This document shows, piece by piece, positions 14,377 to 41,194 of a DNA stretch of 64,000 nucleotides; position 1 is the first letter of the stretch; every line of letters begins with the position of its first letter. The notes under the pieces were generated by a model that was given only the letters and a program-made list of their open reading frames with translations, made no database searches and was not told where the DNA came from. Origin of the DNA: Amphiscolops sp. MND2022 (taxonomy: Eukaryota); NCBI GenBank assembly GCA_964187785.1, contig OZ076420.1, forward strand, positions 26,722,001 to 26,786,000, in the 5' to 3' direction. Position numbers and translations under genes: made by a program.

Positions 14377-14548
14377 TTAATTTGGCAAAATTCTGTATAG
14401 GAAGAAGTTGTAGAGCATTGACAGCACAAGAATACATGAGATGACCACAATCAAGATGGCTCCGAATATTCTTGAAGTTCCCGCTTTGGCTTTCAGCTCT
14501 TGAGTTTCCTTTTTGCCTTTAGGAAGCAGTGGAAGGAACAAAATAAAA
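14377..14548 (-). CDS. BT1/FBT transporter, exon 8 (terminal)
   Basis: FILFLPLLPKGKKETQELKAKAGTSRIFGAIL...PN*; LLP.xK.ETQEL is typical of FBT C-termini. Confidence 0.85.
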
Positions 14549-15560
14549 CTTCAAGCGAATCAGGGATGTTAAAATTATAGAAATTGACGCAATTTTGGAC
14601 TCGCTAAATTATTCCAAAACTGTTTTGATGATTTGGACCATAGACGATGGTCAAGACTTTTGATTGTTTTCCGCGCGAAATGACACCTGCAAGTGCATTT
14701 TGACAGTTTCAAATGAGTGCTCCTAGAAAAAGCAGGACCAGTCATATTTGAATATTAAATGATGAACTCAACGTCTTCAATGTTCGAATACTTCAACTAC
14801 CAATTTTTTTTTTCAAAAAAATGAGATGGTTTCGATAATTTTGCTTCTGGTAGAATTTTTGGGGGGAGACAAATCAAAGCCAGATGCTCTAAGGTTCCAA
14901 AAAGCTAAAAACATCAAATCTCAAATTTTTCTAAAATCAAGTGACAAGATAGTCCCAAATGGAAAACTGTCTCCAAGTTTGAATAGATTTACAGGGGTGT
15001 TTTTGTTTTGATATCAAACAAAGGATAGAAAACTTAAAACAGCTTTTTTTACTGTGGGCATTTTCTGAAATTTATCGTGCAATCTCAAAAGGAGCTGGTC
15101 ATAAAAAATGTTTGCAGCAAACTTTGTACCTTTTACTCAGATGTCTAACGCTTGACTTTAACATTTTTTTGGAAACGAGCTCCTCGAACATTTACACCGC
15201 AAAACGATCACATAAAGCGAATTCTTCCTTTTCACTTCATAAAATATTGTTTCGACGGAATTACAGCTGTTTTAGGCTGCTCATTTTTCAAGAAAGTATT
15301 TTCAAAAAATCGTTAGAGGTGAAAGGAAAAAAACGGTGTCAAGGGTACAAAAGTGATCCAGGGGAAGTTTCCATTCTGACCAGTACTTGTCGAGATTTTG
15401 CCTAATTAAGTTCAATTTTTGTTAGCTATATCGAGTGTTTTCACCTTCGTCGAACACTAGTGTATCCAACGCATCGAGGTATTCTAACTACCATTTCCAG
15501 AGCATGGTAGATTCGGAAAACTCCTAAAATAATAATTTTCTGATAAGTTAATTAGCATCC

Positions 15561-15741
15561 CTGGTGTTGCATGTAAAGATGATGATGTACTGAAGTGCAA
15601 CCATCATGCGGTCAGAGTGACTGTCTCTGTCGAAGCGGTGGTGGTCACTCACGTCGAAGGGGTATGCCAACAAGTTGGCTAAAATGGGACCCAGCGACGA
15701 GCTCGCATTCACTGATGTAGTCAGCACTGAATATGACAGAC
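15561..15741 (-). CDS. BT1/FBT transporter, exon 7
   Basis: GLSYSVLTTSVNASSSLGP; CTCAG acceptor; the donor is apparently non-canonical GG. Confidence 0.82.
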
Positions 15742-16074
15742 CTGAGACAAAATGCAATCAAGTACTTTCTACATTCAATATAAAATTTGATATAAGAGTG
15801 ATGGATATTCAAGTTGTCGCCTATTGGAAGTGCAGTTTTGCGGTATAATAGAAACTTCGATCAAAAACTGACTGTTTGCCTAACTGAACATTCATTTTGT
15901 CAAACGACATTTTTTTCCGAAAAAAGCGGAAGTAAAATATAATGCTCAAGAAAGAGGCACGTGGTTGTTATTTGCTGCCCACATATAATGAGGGAGGGAA
16001 TTCATAATCTGTGTTGCGTTTTTTTCCAAATTTTGCCAAATCTCCAATTTATTACTTAATTTGATAAATTCTAG

Positions 16075-16200
16075 TCACCATGACGCAGTTGGTATTGCGG
16101 CTGCCTGACAGACACGAGGTTCGAACCCATGATGAGGCGTTACATTTTCAGCGGAAAACAAACCCGGAGGTGCTTACCGGGTGTCTTGTTTAACATAATC
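16075..16200 (+). mobile_element. tRNA-derived SINE-like sequence
   Basis: A-box-like TGACGCAGTTGG (16081) and B-box GGTTCGAACCC (16118); no complete cloverleaf or CCA; 3' boundary uncertain. Confidence 0.5.
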
Positions 16201-16215
16201 TTAAGGAGGTGAAAT

Positions 16216-16747
16216 CCCTTGTTGAAACTATTTGAACTTTATGCATGTACTTTAATGTTGCCAGCAACTTTCATCATGATTTTCTAAAGCTCTTACGGAA
16301 ACGTTCATGCGAAAATCTTTCCCTGTTGTATTTAACTTTTACCAAGCTGCTTCAAAGATTCATGGTTTGCAGGTTTCTGAAGTTTTGCAGGTTTCATTAA
16401 GCAGCAGCTATAATTTTGCAAGCAAATAAACTGTTATCAGTTTTACCGCTAATATATTGCAAAATAATTTCAGGCGCGTAGTAAACTGCAAATTTGCGTC
16501 ATGTTTAACGTGCTATTTGAGAAGCGATGATCACATCAGATGAGTAGTTAAGAAAACAAAGAGTGAATAGAAAGTGATCATATTGAAAATATTGTATAAT
16601 TTATTTTCAAATTTAATTGCAGTACTGGAAAACGAAGTGTAATTGTGCATGATTTACCACCCAAAGTTCTCTGAATTTTCCAGGTTAAAAAAATACCCTG
16701 CATTCAGGCCTGCAGCATGTAAAAAGTTCCTGCAGTTTCAACTAGGG
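16216..16747. mobile_element. Possible MITE
   Basis: 14-bp terminal inverted repeat CCCT(T/A)GTTGAAACT with 13/14 matching; TSD not clear. Confidence 0.3.
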
Positions 16748-16991
16748 ATGTGAACCCTATCAAAAAGTTTTGCGACATCAATTGAACTTTATCATAACTT
16801 GTTGCATTTGTTTCCTGTCGAAAGTGTTGGGTTTTGACTACTGTTTTTAACTATATTACAGAAAACGTTCTCCCCTTATGTCGAAAACTAAGTTACGATC
16901 GGGCCTAAAAGAGCCGGAATTTTCAGGCGTGATTCAAATCAGAAAAAAAACGTTTGAGTGTTTGAAATTATCATTTGAAAAAAATTCGAAC

Positions 16992-17445
16992 CTTCATTGT
17001 CGGACTCTGATATCTCTATGAATAGCAACAAGACACATATGTAGGATACGCCTTGAAAAAACTGAATTCCCATGCCATCTATCACGTAGATGTACTGGTT
17101 TCTGATGACGTCAAAGATCACGATGTAGGTAACAGTGGCATTTGCCAAAACCCGAACTAGGGAAGTGATGGCGAATGTTGCAACCCAGCTATAGTCAATG
17201 AGGTATGTGGCGAACACAGTGGAACCTACAGAGAACATGACACCCCCAAGAACACCGACAAGCACGTTATTGGTCAAATTGTCTACCCCCACCCATTTTC
17301 GTTGAATCATGGAATCAGCTGGGGAAGAAACAGCGGTAAGAATTGCCACCGAAATTTGGAACACCAAAATCTGTTGAATGGCTTTAGATTTGAAGAGAGT
17401 CCAGGTTTTGGAAGCAACGTGTAGGACAGTATTCCGCTCCTTGAC
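16992..17445 (-). CDS. BT1/FBT transporter, exon 6
   Basis: Several TM helices, RNQY motif, ends IEISESDNEG; phase 0 in, phase 1 out. Confidence 0.88.
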
Positions 17446-17859
17446 CTTGAACAGAAATAAGAATGTGATCATGGAAGTTTGTGAAGGTTGTCACGTCTGA
17501 AGACAAAAATTCTCTGAGTTGATAAGAACTAAGTGGGCGTTTTTAAAAATTCAATAGCAAGTTCTACCATGTTCAACTAAGGCTCAGAAATTTTTCATCC
17601 TTCTGCGTGTAAGAGAAAAGCCAACGCAAACGTGTCAATGTCAATTGTAAAAAACTGAACGACGACAATCGATGACAAGTTTTGATTTGATATAGAAGTT
17701 AGACAAAGCCAACATGTGACCAAGAGCATAATTTAGCGCTGTCTTGGTCTGAAACGGAACTGGGAATCTTAAACAGCTCAAAATAAACCGTCGTCTATGC
17801 ACGGAAAAAAAATTTATAATAATTTTCTTTTTTTTCCAAATTAAAGTGAATAGGTGAAC

Positions 17860-18188
17860 CTTTTCTTCCGTTGTCATGAACATCACAGTCGGCACTGCGA
17901 GACAACTGACTAAGGCTGTTAACAGAAAAATGTGTGTGAGATCTATCCCATTGCACCAGGGGCCACTGTAGTCGTACCAGTTGAGACCAAACCCCTTGAC
18001 CAGAGATCCAACCACCATCCCAATTTGGCGAGTTACATATATCATGGTCTGGGCGGCACCCCTTTTCTTCATCGACTCCCTGCGTGCATACTGGACCATG
18101 AGCCCATCCATTGCAACAACACTGAGAACCAAGAAGAGGTTGAGGAGAAAGAGGAGCGTCATGTACTTGTAGGACTCTTTTTTGTAGT
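17860..18188 (-). CDS. BT1/FBT transporter, exon 5
   Basis: VVAMDGLMVQYARRESMKKRGAAQTMIY is the MFS/BT1 D-G..R-E..RG..Q motif; phases fit. Confidence 0.9.
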
Positions 18189-18374
18189 CTAAAAAATGAA
18201 TTTTTGCCTCTTTTGAATAAAAGATGAAATAATTGAGTCCACTTGCAGGTATTTGGAAGTTGGAGTGTGAATATTGCAACAATATCGATAGATCAATATA
18301 ATCAGATCTGGCCGATATATTCGATTCAACCTGGAAAATTCCATGATATTGCTATGTGAACAGCTCGTACTCAC

Positions 18375-37942: not shown

Positions 37943-38134
37943 TGTAGAGGACATAGACAACCTACATAATTAGTCTACTTTTGTTGCTATAACAATTTAC
38001 TATGATGCTCTTTTATTAAATACCTGCCCACTTAGTGCAGATGATTTTCGATCATAAAGAATTGGCATTAAGCAAGGATACAGTTGAGTTTGAATGGAAG
38101 TATCTCTTTTCAACCAATGAGCTAGAATACAACA
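37943..38134 (+). repeat. 3' LTR of element E (192 bp)
   Basis: TG...AATACAACA termini, preceded by the PPT. Confidence 0.8.
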
Positions 38135-38652
38135 TTCATGTATATACTTTTTCATAAATAAAACAGCACGAAATAGGCTAATGCTAATGGTAGTATCGCC
38201 TCCTCATCCAAAATACGATTTAACTCAAATCACACAAAATAATAATGGCATTCGGTTTTCCTTTGTTAGAGCAATATCCATTTTTCTGGTAGATTTGAGC
38301 TTCATTCGAGATCAATTGTAAATAAATTAGCATCAGATGCCAAAAAATCGTAACGGTATTGTTCCCAGGTTTTTGATGGAACATGTAAGAAAAACATGCG
38401 AGTCATAGCAAGACCATGAAAGTTTTGTTTATGGCTACTAATTTCCATGTACGGAAACTCTGTATTAACTACATGACATTGTATACTAGACGGTCAACCC
38501 GGAAACTATTATCAATCGAAACATTGATTCACTTTCCAAAGCTTCTGAAAATGAACTTTGAACCTGTTGAACATGACATTAACGCGATATTATACCATGT
38601 TTTTGCGGAGTAAAATTGAATGAATAAAATTATAGGAACAAATCCAACTAAC

Positions 38653-38836
38653 CTTGAGTCTGGAAGTGGGATTGAAAATAAAAAGAAAGCCGTGATTGCA
38701 CAACCGACCCAACCAACTACCATGTAGGGTTTCCTTCTGTATCCCATGATGGGAAGGCAGTCGTTGATGGCCCCATAGACGAACTTCAGACTCCAAGGCA
38801 GAGCCACTGCTGACCCGGCCACGTTGTAGAAATTAC
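38653..38836 (-). CDS. BT1/FBT transporter, exon 3
   Basis: ALPWSLKFVYGAINDCLPIMGYRRKPYMVVGW is the BT1 signature; AG acceptor, GT donor. Confidence 0.92.
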
Positions 38837-39799
38837 CTGAGGAAGAACTCCTTTCTTTTGAAAACATAGGTGCATCTTTGGAGCAAAGAATCTGAATTCT
38901 TTTGAGCCAGAGATGTAAACATAGAGGAGAATGTAAACATAGGAAACAAAAAGTTTCGTCAAAAAATATAGTTGGTCTGTTTCTGGATCAAACTGGGAGA
39001 ATGAAAATCTTGCCAAGACTATTAGAATCTTAGAAAACATGGAGAACTTGACAAAAGAAATTATTCATTGAATATCCCAGTCTCACATTCGAAGAGTTAT
39101 CAAGAGAGCTATCAATAAAATAATGACTCCGCCCGCAACTGCAGAATACAGTGATAAGCTTCATCACAGAAGTGACGTTGCCATACACGATGGACCTCAT
39201 AAAATCACTGACTGTGATGCTCCCTGCCTGCAAATCAAACAGGCAATGCAACGATGTCTTGAACCATCTTGAAGAAAAAAATGTCGCTAAAACTTCAGCT
39301 AAAATCTCAATTGACCAGCCAAGGCAAGAAATACGAACTTATTGGCTCCTTGATTTGATGGCTCCTGATAAAGAGTATCATGGTAATTTTGATGCCAATC
39401 CGATGAATACAACCAGCTGAAAAATAGGAGTACTTTTATCAGGTTCTTAATTGGGCTGATGCTCAATGAATACCTTTTCATACTGAGGAGAAAACAACTT
39501 ACTGTACAATCACTTTTGAAGCTATTGCAAGTGTGCCTCAAGAACAAACTCTAGAAAAAACAGTCGTTTCTTGCCAAATCTCTCACGAACTACTTTATGA
39601 GCTTTTCGAAATGAATTTTTATACAGGGAGATGGAATTTATCTACCTACGTTGATGAAAAAAAAAATCAATTATTTTGGCTGATAGAAAAGTTCTTTATC
39701 TCACGGACATTTTTTAGGTATTCAGTGGTAATTTGACCTTTTTCACGTGATTCAGCAAAGGTTACACGCGTGAAATGGAGAATCAGAAGGGGTTCTTTC

Positions 39800-39946
39800 C
39801 TGTTTGGCCTAAATACGAGGTGAAGAAATCGTAATTGAGACTGATAGAGAATGTATAAGCAATTCCCACAAAGAAGTATTGCAGGAATAATCCAAAATGC
39901 TGCCAATGGAAGTAGTTGATATCTTCCGCAACTTCTCCATCCAATG
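39800..39946 (-). CDS. BT1/FBT transporter, exon 2 (LDGEVAEDINYFHWQHFGLFLQYFFVG...YLGQTG)
   Basis: TTCAG acceptor; first TM helix of the FBT family; the donor is non-canonical GA. Confidence 0.8.
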
Positions 39947-41194
39947 CTGAAGCAAATAAGTTACTGAGACCCTTTAAATTGAAGTAATGAAAAAACTTTA
40001 ATATGTGATTGTTTTCTAAGTCACGTTATTAAAATTGTTGAAGCTCTTCAATTTTTTTTTAAAAAATGTGTTTTTGTTTCGACAAACTTCGACTAGCTGA
40101 AAAATTGATTTTGAATAGGTCTCCCGTTAGGACTTTTTCTCACGAATTAATGAGAATTTTTGAAAATCGGACACACTTATGCAATTGAAAGCTAGAGTTG
40201 TCAATATTCCTTGACTAAAAAAGTGCCATCGAGGCAAGCGAAAAAACGTTTGTTTGCAAGAGAATATGATAGCACTATGTAGTTTCACTATCAATAAATT
40301 CCATACTTCTGTCATACCTCTCCAAACAGTATAATTTCATTTCAGAAACATTTTGCCCATAGGCTGGGTTGTCTAGTTCAAGTCATACTTACTTAATAGT
40401 GGAGTAACGTTTGTCAAGCGGTTCATCCAATCAACATGACCTCTACCGAGTTTCGGTCAGAGACAACATCCGCTAGTTGTTTGTAAACACAACAAACTGA
40501 AGATAGAAACCTGTTATATCATTTTGAGTTCTTTTTGTATAGATTTTAGATACAAAGATACAATCCTAATTTAGTACGCAATTCTCCGTTTTCACAAGAA
40601 TACAACATGGTAAAACGGTGCAGTCAGCCAATGATTGAACAAACTAAAACGAACTTCCTAAAATTAGTAGTGGCAGGAAGAAACTGCTTCGTACCTAAAA
40701 GTGAAGGCTTCGGGTGAGAATCCGGTATATACACCGAGAGAAGGGCTGGAGAGGCTCCGAAAGATCACAGAACGAGACATTGATCCTTTACGTCCCTGAT
40801 TCCGGTTGGACCAAAAAGAACAACAGATACGAAAAGATTTGAGGAGTGGGATCCGAAGCATTCTACCAAATAACTTGAGCGGACCACCAAACAGAACTCG
40901 ACAGTATCGAAAACAAAGACCTGATCTCGTTATTCAACGTATTTTATCTCCCGAAACAGCCGAAAGGAAACAGAACACACACCATACCTGAGGAGACTTC
41001 TTCTGCACCAAACAGACCGAAAACGATACATCAGAAGAAATCCTGAGATGATTATTCGAGATTGAGGAAGACTGTAGCTTCAATACAATTCCCGCTGCAG
41101 AAGTGTTATTATCAAAGCATATGACCGCAATCATCGAGACCAAACGAGACAAAGTGATAAATGAAACGACTTTGGACTTGAAGAAGACTATCAA

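What the first reader, a model, noticed from the sequence alone, without database searches (positions are those of the whole stretch)
39790..39810. Host intron 2 appears to use a non-canonical GA 5' splice site
Seen: the exon reads ...YLGQT-G|GAAAGA with an in-frame TGA five codons later and no GT in between. The next exon (CCTCAG|GT AAT) needs exactly phase 1. The only upstream phase-1 GT found (ATC A|GTCTCA) would delete 14 residues. From recalled FBT homologues, the QY-to-PW spacing fits the GA junction. Knowledge: GA-AG introns are rare and reported in dinoflagellates, Oikopleura and a copepod. Five of the seven donors in this gene follow exonic AG. Inference: a relaxed 5' splice-site rule in this organism.
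Basis: partly seen in the sequence, partly recalled or inferred. Interest (0 to 1): 0.75.

Follow-up and report, generated by a model that had tools for sequence, protein, structure and literature searches.

The report
GA-start intron in transporter gene
One intron of an intact membrane-transporter gene in this animal-like genome starts with GA instead of the near-universal GT, and its two ends can pair; protein comparison and DNA reads support this, but no RNA data were available to show that it is spliced.

Summary
On the minus strand, an exon of a BT1/folate-biopterin-transporter gene ends ...CAAACAG at 39800. It is followed by GAAAGA, with an in-frame TGA at 39785-39783 and no GT in between. 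The next exon starts at 38836 after TTCTTCCTCAG.

Removing exactly these 963 bases leaves 34 residues between two conserved anchors, as in 117 of 119 homologues. The best GT/GC alternatives leave 31, 37 or 20.

DNA contigs from four runs of one sample read GA at full depth, so an assembly error or a GT allele in that animal is unlikely.

A second non-GT donor (CAG|GGATGC, 15561/15560) lies in the same gene. Both non-GT introns have terminal inverted repeats that pair in whole-intron folds. Three GT introns of the gene showed no significant terminal repeat, and the two that were folded did not pair at their ends.

Best reading: a real GA-AG intron, probably derived from a transposon, in a genome that tolerates G-N donors after exonic AG. 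It resembles Eurytemora and Oikopleura.

No RNA runs or transcripts were found, so splicing is inferred, not shown. The scan had already noted the same phenomenon on other DNA of this genome.

The parts
39800..39962 (-). Exon '2' of the BT1/FBT gene (3' part; its true 5' end was not fixed), ending ...TATTTAGGCCAAACAG
   Evidence: hmmsearch with a profile of 129 homologues places this ORF at profile positions 53-95, directly next to exon 3 at 94-157. tblastn with five homologues runs across the junction without a gap.
39794..39799 (-). Non-canonical 5' splice site GAAAGA, preceded by exonic CAG. Seven of nine positions match CAG|GTAAGT; the mismatches are at +2 and +6.
   Evidence: Sequence. 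The DNA contig covering 39792-40800 shows no difference at these bases in any of four runs.
39783..39785 (-). In-frame TGA that ends the reading frame if the exon is read through
39787..39801 (-). Left arm of the terminal inverted repeat (AGGAAAGAACCCCTT); it spans the 5' splice junction
   Evidence: Local alignment to the reverse complement of the 3' end scores 18, p=0.01 by shuffling and 0.018 against 2977 pseudo-introns drawn from this window. Pairing probability is 0.7-1.0 for most of its pairs in the fold of the whole intron.
38840..38853 (-). Right arm of the terminal inverted repeat (AAGGAGTTCTTCCT); it doubles as the polypyrimidine tract
   Evidence: A second genomic copy of exon 3 shares the sequence up to exactly 38853 and then differs (loose end).
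38837..39799 (-). Intron '2', 963 bases, GA...AG. It is single-copy by word depth and has no other copy in the window.
38653..38836 (-). Exon '3' (GNFYNVAGSAVALPWSLKFVYGAINDC...), ending CAAG|GTTAGT
   Evidence: Pfam BT1 PF03092, E=3.4e-09. phmmer found 665 relatives.
39807..39808 (-). Rival GC donor (TTTAG|GCCAAA), phase 1, nine bases upstream of the GA site
   Evidence: profile score 125.9 against 135.8 for the GA junction. It leaves 31 residues instead of the invariant 34.
14549..15560 (-). Second non-GT intron of the same gene (CAG|GGATGC ... GAAG|T). Its inverted ends read CAGGGATGCTAA / TTAACATCCCTG (15563-15552 and 14572-14561).
   Evidence: p=0.0035; 0.0007.
14380..18241 (-). Downstream exons: 18241-17860, 17445-16992, 15741-15561 and 14548-14383 (stop codon 14382-14380). 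The three donors in this stretch are two GT (AAG|GTTCAC, AAG|GTTCGA) and the GG donor above; exon 3's GT donor (AAG|GTTAGT) lies outside it.
   Evidence: The joined 1533-base reading frame is open and scores 428.7 bits, E=1.9e-132, against the homologue profile.

Best explanation
The 963 bases 39799-38837 (minus strand) are a real spliceosomal, U2-type intron with a GA-AG boundary in an intact BT1/folate-biopterin-transporter gene.

Shown: the DNA reads GA. The coding sequence is colinear with the family only if exactly this piece is removed. The site has full exonic CAG, G at +1, A at +3 and +4 and G at +5, and a good polypyrimidine tract with CAG at the 3' end.

Inferred: U1 and U6 recognise the site through the seven matching positions, and the spliceosome of this lineage tolerates any base at +2 when AG precedes, as in Eurytemora and Oikopleura. 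The intron probably began as an insertion of a terminal-inverted-repeat element whose end starts CAGG. That would explain both the obligate exonic AG and the non-T at +2. In the pre-mRNA the two arms can pair and bring the two splice sites within a few bases of each other, which may help a weak donor to be used.
For: - Spacing: 117 of 119 homologues have exactly 34 residues between the conserved G of YFxVG and the P of LPW. The GA junction gives 34.
- Junction ranking: the 12 best of 12,306 stop-free junctions all remove 963 bases. The best canonical ones score 5.5-10 bits lower.
- Colinearity: five homologues align across the junction without a gap, and the profile positions of the two exons abut.
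- DNA: GA is confirmed at full depth with no alternative contig.
- Gene integrity: the six-exon, 1533-base frame is open and scores E=1.9e-132.
- Second case: a GG donor in the same gene also follows CAG and has A at +3.
- Compensation: the non-GT donors match the consensus better elsewhere (7/9 and 6/9) than two of the GT donors do (4/9 and 5/9), read.
- End-pairing: terminal inverted repeats occur in both non-GT introns and in none of three GT introns. Whole-intron folds pair the ends with probability near 1 in the two non-GT introns only; two GT introns were folded.
- Literature: the published GA-donor context is the same (PMC5714493, PMC7072748), and transposon-derived introns with inverted ends and odd boundaries are documented (PMC11282704).
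Against: - No RNA evidence. The only four runs found are DNA-like and show no 39800/38836 joint. No same-species transcript or protein exists in the protein collections.
- The inverted repeat of this intron is only modestly significant: 0.01-0.02 by alignment score, and 0.03 (shuffles) to 0.066 (window pseudo-introns) by duplex energy.
- A helix over the 5' splice site could hinder U1 as easily as help it.
- Removing a transposon insertion plus one copy of its target duplication would also restore the frame exactly. Colinearity alone therefore cannot tell a spliced intron from an unspliced insertion.
- Exon 1 and the start codon were not found.
- Near-identical copies of exon 3 exist elsewhere in the genome, so this copy could be dispensable.
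Confidence: 0.65

Rival explanations
1. An unspliced transposon insertion in a formerly continuous exon makes this copy a dead or dying paralogue. The exact restoration of the frame then simply reflects element plus target-site duplication (CAGG).
For: - CAGG is repeated directly at both borders, and the ends are inverted repeats.
- Exon 3 has 2-3 times the word depth, and a contig leaves the window's sequence at 38853, so at least one more copy exists.
- The gene is riddled with mobile elements: a 20-kb intron 3 holding a Polinton (note).
- No start exon was found.
Against: - All six exons are open over 1533 bases and score E=1.9e-132.
- The repeat arms have already diverged (one mismatch and one gap in 15) and the element is single-copy, so the insertion looks old. 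A gene dead for that long should carry stops or frameshifts. This is an inference that assumes the arms were once identical.
- Both haplotypes of the sequenced animal carry the insertion, and no empty-site joint was seen.
- The other copy also has the right arm and acceptor in front of exon 3.
- CAG|G is the splice consensus at both ends anyway.
- In the GG intron the acceptor lies 12 bases outside the repeat, so there the frame is not restored by simple excision, yet it is still kept.
Confidence: 0.17
2. The intron is removed at another, more conventional site. The main candidate is the GC donor nine bases upstream (TTTAG|GCCAAA, exon end 39809) with the same acceptor. It could also act as a tandem alternative to the GA site, as in the human FGFR genes, where a GA site depends on a nearby canonical site (cited in PMC7072748).
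For: The site is in phase 1, follows exonic AG and keeps the frame. Other notes of this scan also report GC donors in this genome (unchecked).
Against: It leaves 31 residues where 117 of 119 homologues have 34, and its profile score is 10 bits lower. GCCAAA matches the consensus only at +1 and +4; GC donors normally need a near-perfect rest of the site (general knowledge).
Confidence: 0.1
3. The GA is an assembly or consensus error, or one allele of a GT/GA polymorphism.
For: Another note of this scan reports a GT/GG allelic donor in this animal (s1-184706, unchecked). The four runs may come from the same sample as the assembly.
Against: The contig covering 39792-40800 shows no difference at 39798-39799 in any of four runs. 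Its depth equals the sum of the two arms of the neighbouring heterozygous bubble, and no alternative contig was seen at 39798-39799.
Confidence: 0.03

Closest known systems
GA and GG 5' donors of the copepod Eurytemora affinis, and GA-AG introns of Oikopleura dioica (Robertson 2017, PMC5714493; Frey & Pucker 2020, PMC7072748)
   Same: G at +1 with A or G at +2, AG at the end of the upstream exon whatever the phase, A at +3, and an ordinary AG acceptor. GA and GG occur side by side in one gene.
   Different: Those cases are backed by spliced RNA reads and genome-wide counts (about 10-12% of introns in the genes sampled in E. affinis). Here there is no RNA, and only two of the five donors identified in one gene are non-GT. 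Terminal inverted repeats are not reported as a feature there. By earlier notes of this scan, which I did not verify, the organism is an acoel worm. I found no paper describing such donors in that group.
Transposon-derived introns: introners, and MITE-derived non-canonical introns of Fritillaria borealis (review PMC11282704; PMC13326754)
   Same: Inverted repeats at the intron ends, a short direct repeat at the borders, non-GT boundaries, and ends that can pair in the RNA.
   Different: No repeated family was demonstrated: the element is single-copy by word depth and has no second copy in the window. The 3' end is a normal AG, unlike Fritillaria's AG-AC or AG-AT. At 963 bases it is larger than most introners.
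GA 5' splice site of human FGFR1-3 (Brackenridge 2003, as cited in PMC5714493 and PMC7072748)
   Same: A GA donor used by the major spliceosome, with another candidate donor a few bases upstream.
   Different: There it is an alternative site that depends on a GT six bases upstream. Here the upstream candidate is a weak GC nine bases away, and the GA site is the one that fits the protein family.

Membership tests
U2-type GA-AG introns of the Eurytemora/Oikopleura kind | Genomic DNA has G at +1 and A at +2 | tested here: met
   Window sequence. DNA contigs of four runs agree at full depth.
U2-type GA-AG introns of the Eurytemora/Oikopleura kind | Exonic AG directly upstream and A at +3 | tested here: met
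   CAG|GAAAGA. Criteria taken from PMC5714493 and PMC7072748.
U2-type GA-AG introns of the Eurytemora/Oikopleura kind | Ordinary 3' end: polypyrimidine tract followed by AG | tested here: met
   GTTCTTCCTCAG|G.
U2-type GA-AG introns of the Eurytemora/Oikopleura kind | The junction is present in mRNA | not testable with these tools
   Only DNA-like runs were served. No transcript-derived protein was found.
U2-type GA-AG introns of the Eurytemora/Oikopleura kind | Such donors are frequent across the genome | tested here: inconclusive
   Two of the five donors identified in this gene are non-GT. The window has no other host gene. Other cases are known only from unchecked notes of this scan.
Transposon-derived introns (introner or MITE type) | Terminal inverted repeats at the intron ends | tested here: met
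   14 of 15 positions with one gap, p=0.01 and 0.018. The ends pair in the whole-intron fold. The support is modest for this intron and strong for the GG intron.
Transposon-derived introns (introner or MITE type) | Target-site duplication flanking the element | tested here: inconclusive
   CAGG stands at both borders, but this is also the splice-site consensus.
Transposon-derived introns (introner or MITE type) | Many similar copies elsewhere in the genome | tested here: not met
   No second copy in the window. The intron's interior word depth equals that of the unique flanks. A whole-genome search was not possible.
U12-type (minor) introns | 5' site RTATCCTT | tested here: not met
   The intron starts GAAAGAAC.
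BT1 / folate-biopterin transporter family (host gene) | Match to Pfam PF03092 above its cut-off, and full-length colinearity with family members | tested here: met
   Exon 3 scores 36.4 bits against a cut-off of 22. The joined model scores 428.7 bits against a profile of 129 homologues.

The most novel reading that the evidence does not exclude
In this lineage, inverted-repeat elements whose ends begin CAGG insert into exons and are spliced out from the start. The paired ends present the two cut sites together, so the second intron base no longer matters. This would be a structure-assisted way of defining introns in a bilaterian animal, and it would create new introns and the GA/GG/GC donors in one step.
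Probability: 0.2. Interest if true: 0.8.

Novelty: new member of a known kind. Interest (0 to 1): 0.55.

Why it matters
If RNA confirms it, this genome joins the very few animals (one copepod and some larvacean tunicates) whose major spliceosome accepts G-A and G-G donors. It would do so in a lineage for which I found no such report.

On the practical side, gene finders that insist on GT/GC will truncate or split genes such as this one.

Non-GT donors coincide here with paired intron ends, while GT introns of the same gene lack them. This gives a natural contrast for asking two things: whether such introns arise from transposons, and whether end-pairing relaxes 5' splice-site recognition.

Tried and rejected
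- RNA evidence: the look-up of sequencing runs (kind rna) returned only four runs of one sample. They behave as whole-genome DNA, with 0.69-0.88 Gb of contigs and even depth over intron and flanks. Read laying showed no spliced joint.
- Same-species transcripts: an exhaustive phmmer search with exon 3 found nothing above 66% identity. A search seeded with P0010 and a profile search seeded with the window's own exon peptides returned only algal and oomycete relatives, about 27-38% identical over the aligned parts.
- Mariner remnant: my first impression that the intron holds a decayed mariner transposase on the plus strand got no Pfam support, so I dropped it. A phage-collection DNA search with the intron found nothing and was not a useful test.
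- snRNA and leader genes: Rfam found no snRNA or other RNA gene in the window. The published Symsagittifera spliced-leader sequence is absent from the window. Neither U1/U6 variants nor the organism's identity could therefore be checked.
- Donor census: other long ORFs in the window are mobile-element genes or have no family, so no census beyond this gene was possible.
- Exon 1: the homologue profile does not reach it, because the N-terminus is not conserved.
- Second copy: the sequence into which the second exon-3 copy runs is not in the window.
- U12-type intron: rejected on the 5' site sequence.

Full report
**What is there**

The finding lies on the minus strand, in a gene of the BT1/folate-biopterin-transporter family. 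The exon at 38836-38653 matches Pfam PF03092 (36.4 bits, cut-off 22) and finds 665 relatives in an exhaustive phmmer search.

From tblastn with those relatives and inspection of the borders, I built this model:

| Exon | Coordinates (minus strand) | Donor |
|---|---|---|
| 2 | ?-39800 | CAG\|GAAAGA |
| 3 | 38836-38653 | AAG\|GTTAGT |
| 4 | 18241-17860 | AAG\|GTTCAC |
| 5 | 17445-16992 | AAG\|GTTCGA |
| 6 | 15741-15561 | CAG\|GGATGC |
| 7 | 14548-14383 | last exon (stop codon 14382-14380) |

All five donors follow exonic AG. The joined 1533 bases are open and score 428.7 bits (E=1.9e-132) against a profile of 129 homologues. Per-exon profile hits form an unbroken series: 53-95, 94-157, 183-293, 290-442, 441-499 and 505-552. 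Exon 1 and the start codon were not found, because the N-terminus of the family is not conserved. Intron 3 is 20 kb long and holds mobile elements.

**Checking the observation**

The sequence is as described...TAT TTA GGC CAA ACA G|GA AAG AAC CCC TTC TGA. The last exon base is 39800, the intron starts G39799 A39798, the stop is at 39785-39783, and there is no GT in between. The acceptor TTCTTCCTCAG| precedes 38836 in phase 1.

Two points need correcting.
If other acceptors are allowed, 41 GT/GC-AG pairs keep the frame open.
- CAGG stands at both borders. Five cut positions therefore give the same mRNA, and GA...AG is the only one with G at +1 and AG at the end.

**Is the GA junction the right one?**

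I enumerated all 12,306 frame-preserving, stop-free junctions in the region and scored the resulting peptides against the homologue profile.
- The 12 best all remove exactly 963 bases, the length of the GA-AG intron.
- The GA junction scores 135.8 bits.
- The best canonical pairs score 130.3 (GC donor 39809 with acceptor 38854), 125.9 (GC donor 39809 with the same acceptor) and 125.2 bits.

A stronger test is spacing. In the alignment of homologues, 117 of the 119 that have both anchors carry exactly 34 residues between the conserved G of YFxVG and the P of LPW. The GA junction gives 34. The canonical alternatives give 31, 37 or 20. Five homologues also align across the junction without a gap in tblastn. 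The coding sequence therefore requires removal of exactly this piece.

**DNA check**

Laid on 38000-40800, they behave as genomic DNA, with even depth over intron and flanks and 0.69-0.88 Gb of contigs.
- The contig covering 39792-40800 shows no difference from the window at 39798-39799 in any of the four runs. Its depth equals the sum of the two arms of a heterozygous bubble that starts at 39791 (intron +9).
- GA is thus not a consensus error, and this animal is not GT/GA heterozygous.
- Both haplotypes carry the intron, and no empty-site joint appeared.
- The runs may come from the same sample as the assembly, so this is not independent of the individual.
- Exon 3 has 2-3 times the depth of its flanks. 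Position 38816 reads differently in the contigs, and one contig leaves the window's sequence at exactly 38853. At least one further, nearly identical copy of exon 3 therefore exists elsewhere, with the same last 17 intron bases and a different intron interior.

**Anatomy of the site**

CAG|GAAAGA matches the consensus CAG|GTAAGT at seven of nine positions: all of -3 to +1 and +3 to +5. The GG donor matches at six of nine. Two of the GT donors match at only four and five. This is the pattern published for GA/GG donors in Eurytemora affinis (AG obligate in the exon, A at +3; PMC5714493) and for GA-AG introns in E. affinis and Oikopleura dioica (PMC7072748). The 5' end does not fit a U12-type intron.

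**Paired ends**

Notes of this scan from other parts of the same genome prompted me to test the intron ends.

| Intron | Terminal-repeat score | p, shuffled ends | Share of 2977 window pseudo-introns scoring as high |
|---|---|---|---|
| GA (intron 2) | 18 | 0.01 | 0.018 |
| GG (intron 6) | 24 | 0.0035 | 0.0007 |
| Three GT introns | 12-14 | 0.17, 0.44, 0.64 | not computed |

- GA intron: the first bases (AGGAAAGAACCCCTT, 39801-39787) match the reverse complement of the last bases before CAG (AAGGAGTTCTTCCT, 38853-38840) at 14 of 15 positions with one gap.
- GG intron: the ends read CAGGGATGCTAA... and ...TTAACATCCCTG. From memory, this resembles the end of hAT elements such as maize Ac. CAGGGATG occurs only at these two places in the window.
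- Whole-intron folds: the ends of both non-GT introns pair with each other with probability near 1. The two GT introns that were folded show no pairing between their intron ends.
- By duplex energy alone the signal is weaker: 0.066 and 0.107 against the window's own background.
- The support is therefore moderate for this intron and strong for its GG sibling. With two against three introns, the contrast is suggestive, not proof.
- The right arm also forms the polypyrimidine tract. The second genomic copy diverges exactly at the inner edge of that arm.

**Interpretation**

Most likely (0.65) this is a real GA-AG intron of the major spliceosome. It probably descends from an inverted-repeat element whose end begins CAGG. 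The element's CAG supplies the obligate exonic AG, its fourth base supplies the G at +1, and its fifth base is whatever the element had there (A here, G in the other intron). That the spliceosome tolerates this, and that end-pairing helps, are inferences.

The main rival (0.17) is an unspliced insertion in a dispensable copy. Excising an element plus its target duplication would restore the frame just as well, and other copies of the gene exist. Several points count against it:
- the 1.5-kb frame is intact;
- the arms look old and the element is single-copy;
- the insertion is present on both haplotypes;
- the arm and acceptor are also present in the other copy;
- in the GG intron the acceptor lies 12 bases outside the repeat, so simple excision does not explain the preserved frame there.

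Use of the upstream GC donor (0.10) breaks the invariant spacing and has a poor site. An assembly error or a GT allele (0.03) is contradicted.

**Literature and novelty**

- GA and GG donors at high frequency are published for E. affinis and O. dioica.
- Transposon-derived introns with inverted ends and odd boundaries are published for Fritillaria, dinoflagellates, Micromonas and others (PMC11282704, PMC13326754).
- Earlier agents of this scan judged the genome to be an acoel worm's. I could not verify this.
- The Symsagittifera roscoffensis genome paper reports 36.7% G+C, half the genome as LTR elements, and spliced-leader trans-splicing, but says nothing about non-GT donors (PMC9911081).
- My searches for such donors in acoels or Xenacoelomorpha found nothing.
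- The scan had already noted the same phenomenon on other DNA of this genome (s1-151678, s1-184706, s1-193540, s1-193562, and s1-172921 in this gene).

I therefore file this intron as a new member of a known kind. The genome-wide pattern, once backed by RNA, would be the more interesting result.

**Limits**

- No RNA data, no snRNA genes and no census beyond one gene were available.
- Exon 1 was not found.
- The organism was not identified by me.
- The idea that the intron holds a mariner remnant was tested and dropped.

Noticed in passing
window 14549-15563 (minus strand): The other non-GT intron of the same gene (CAG|GGATGC) is bounded by inverted ends, CAGGGATGCTAA... and ...TTAACATCCCTG. 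From memory these look like hAT/Ac-type ends. The right end stops 12 bases before the acceptor. CAGGGATG occurs nowhere else in the window.
   Followed up: partly
window 38649-38853: Exon 3 has 2-3 times the word depth of its flanks in the DNA runs. The contigs read G where the window has C at 38816, a Gly/Arg difference on the coding strand. One contig leaves the window's sequence at exactly 38853. At least one further, nearly identical copy of this exon therefore exists elsewhere in the genome, with a different intron interior.
   Followed up: partly
window 14380-39962 (minus strand): A BT1/folate-biopterin-transporter gene sits in what other notes call an animal (acoel) genome. Its nearest relatives in two large protein collections are from pelagophyte and haptophyte algae and oomycetes, at about 27-38% identity over the aligned parts, and no close animal relative was seen. 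This could be an old horizontal acquisition or a rarely retained family. I did not examine it.
   Followed up: no
window 38045-38115: The DNA contigs show a form that skips 68-69 bases (38045/38046 to 38115) and very high word depth at 38000-38190. This looks like a repeated element with length variants inside intron 3.
   Followed up: no
window 39761-39821: A heterozygous bubble in the DNA contigs starts at 39791 (intron position +9). The second arm is only 54 bases long instead of the expected 61, which I could not explain.
   Followed up: no
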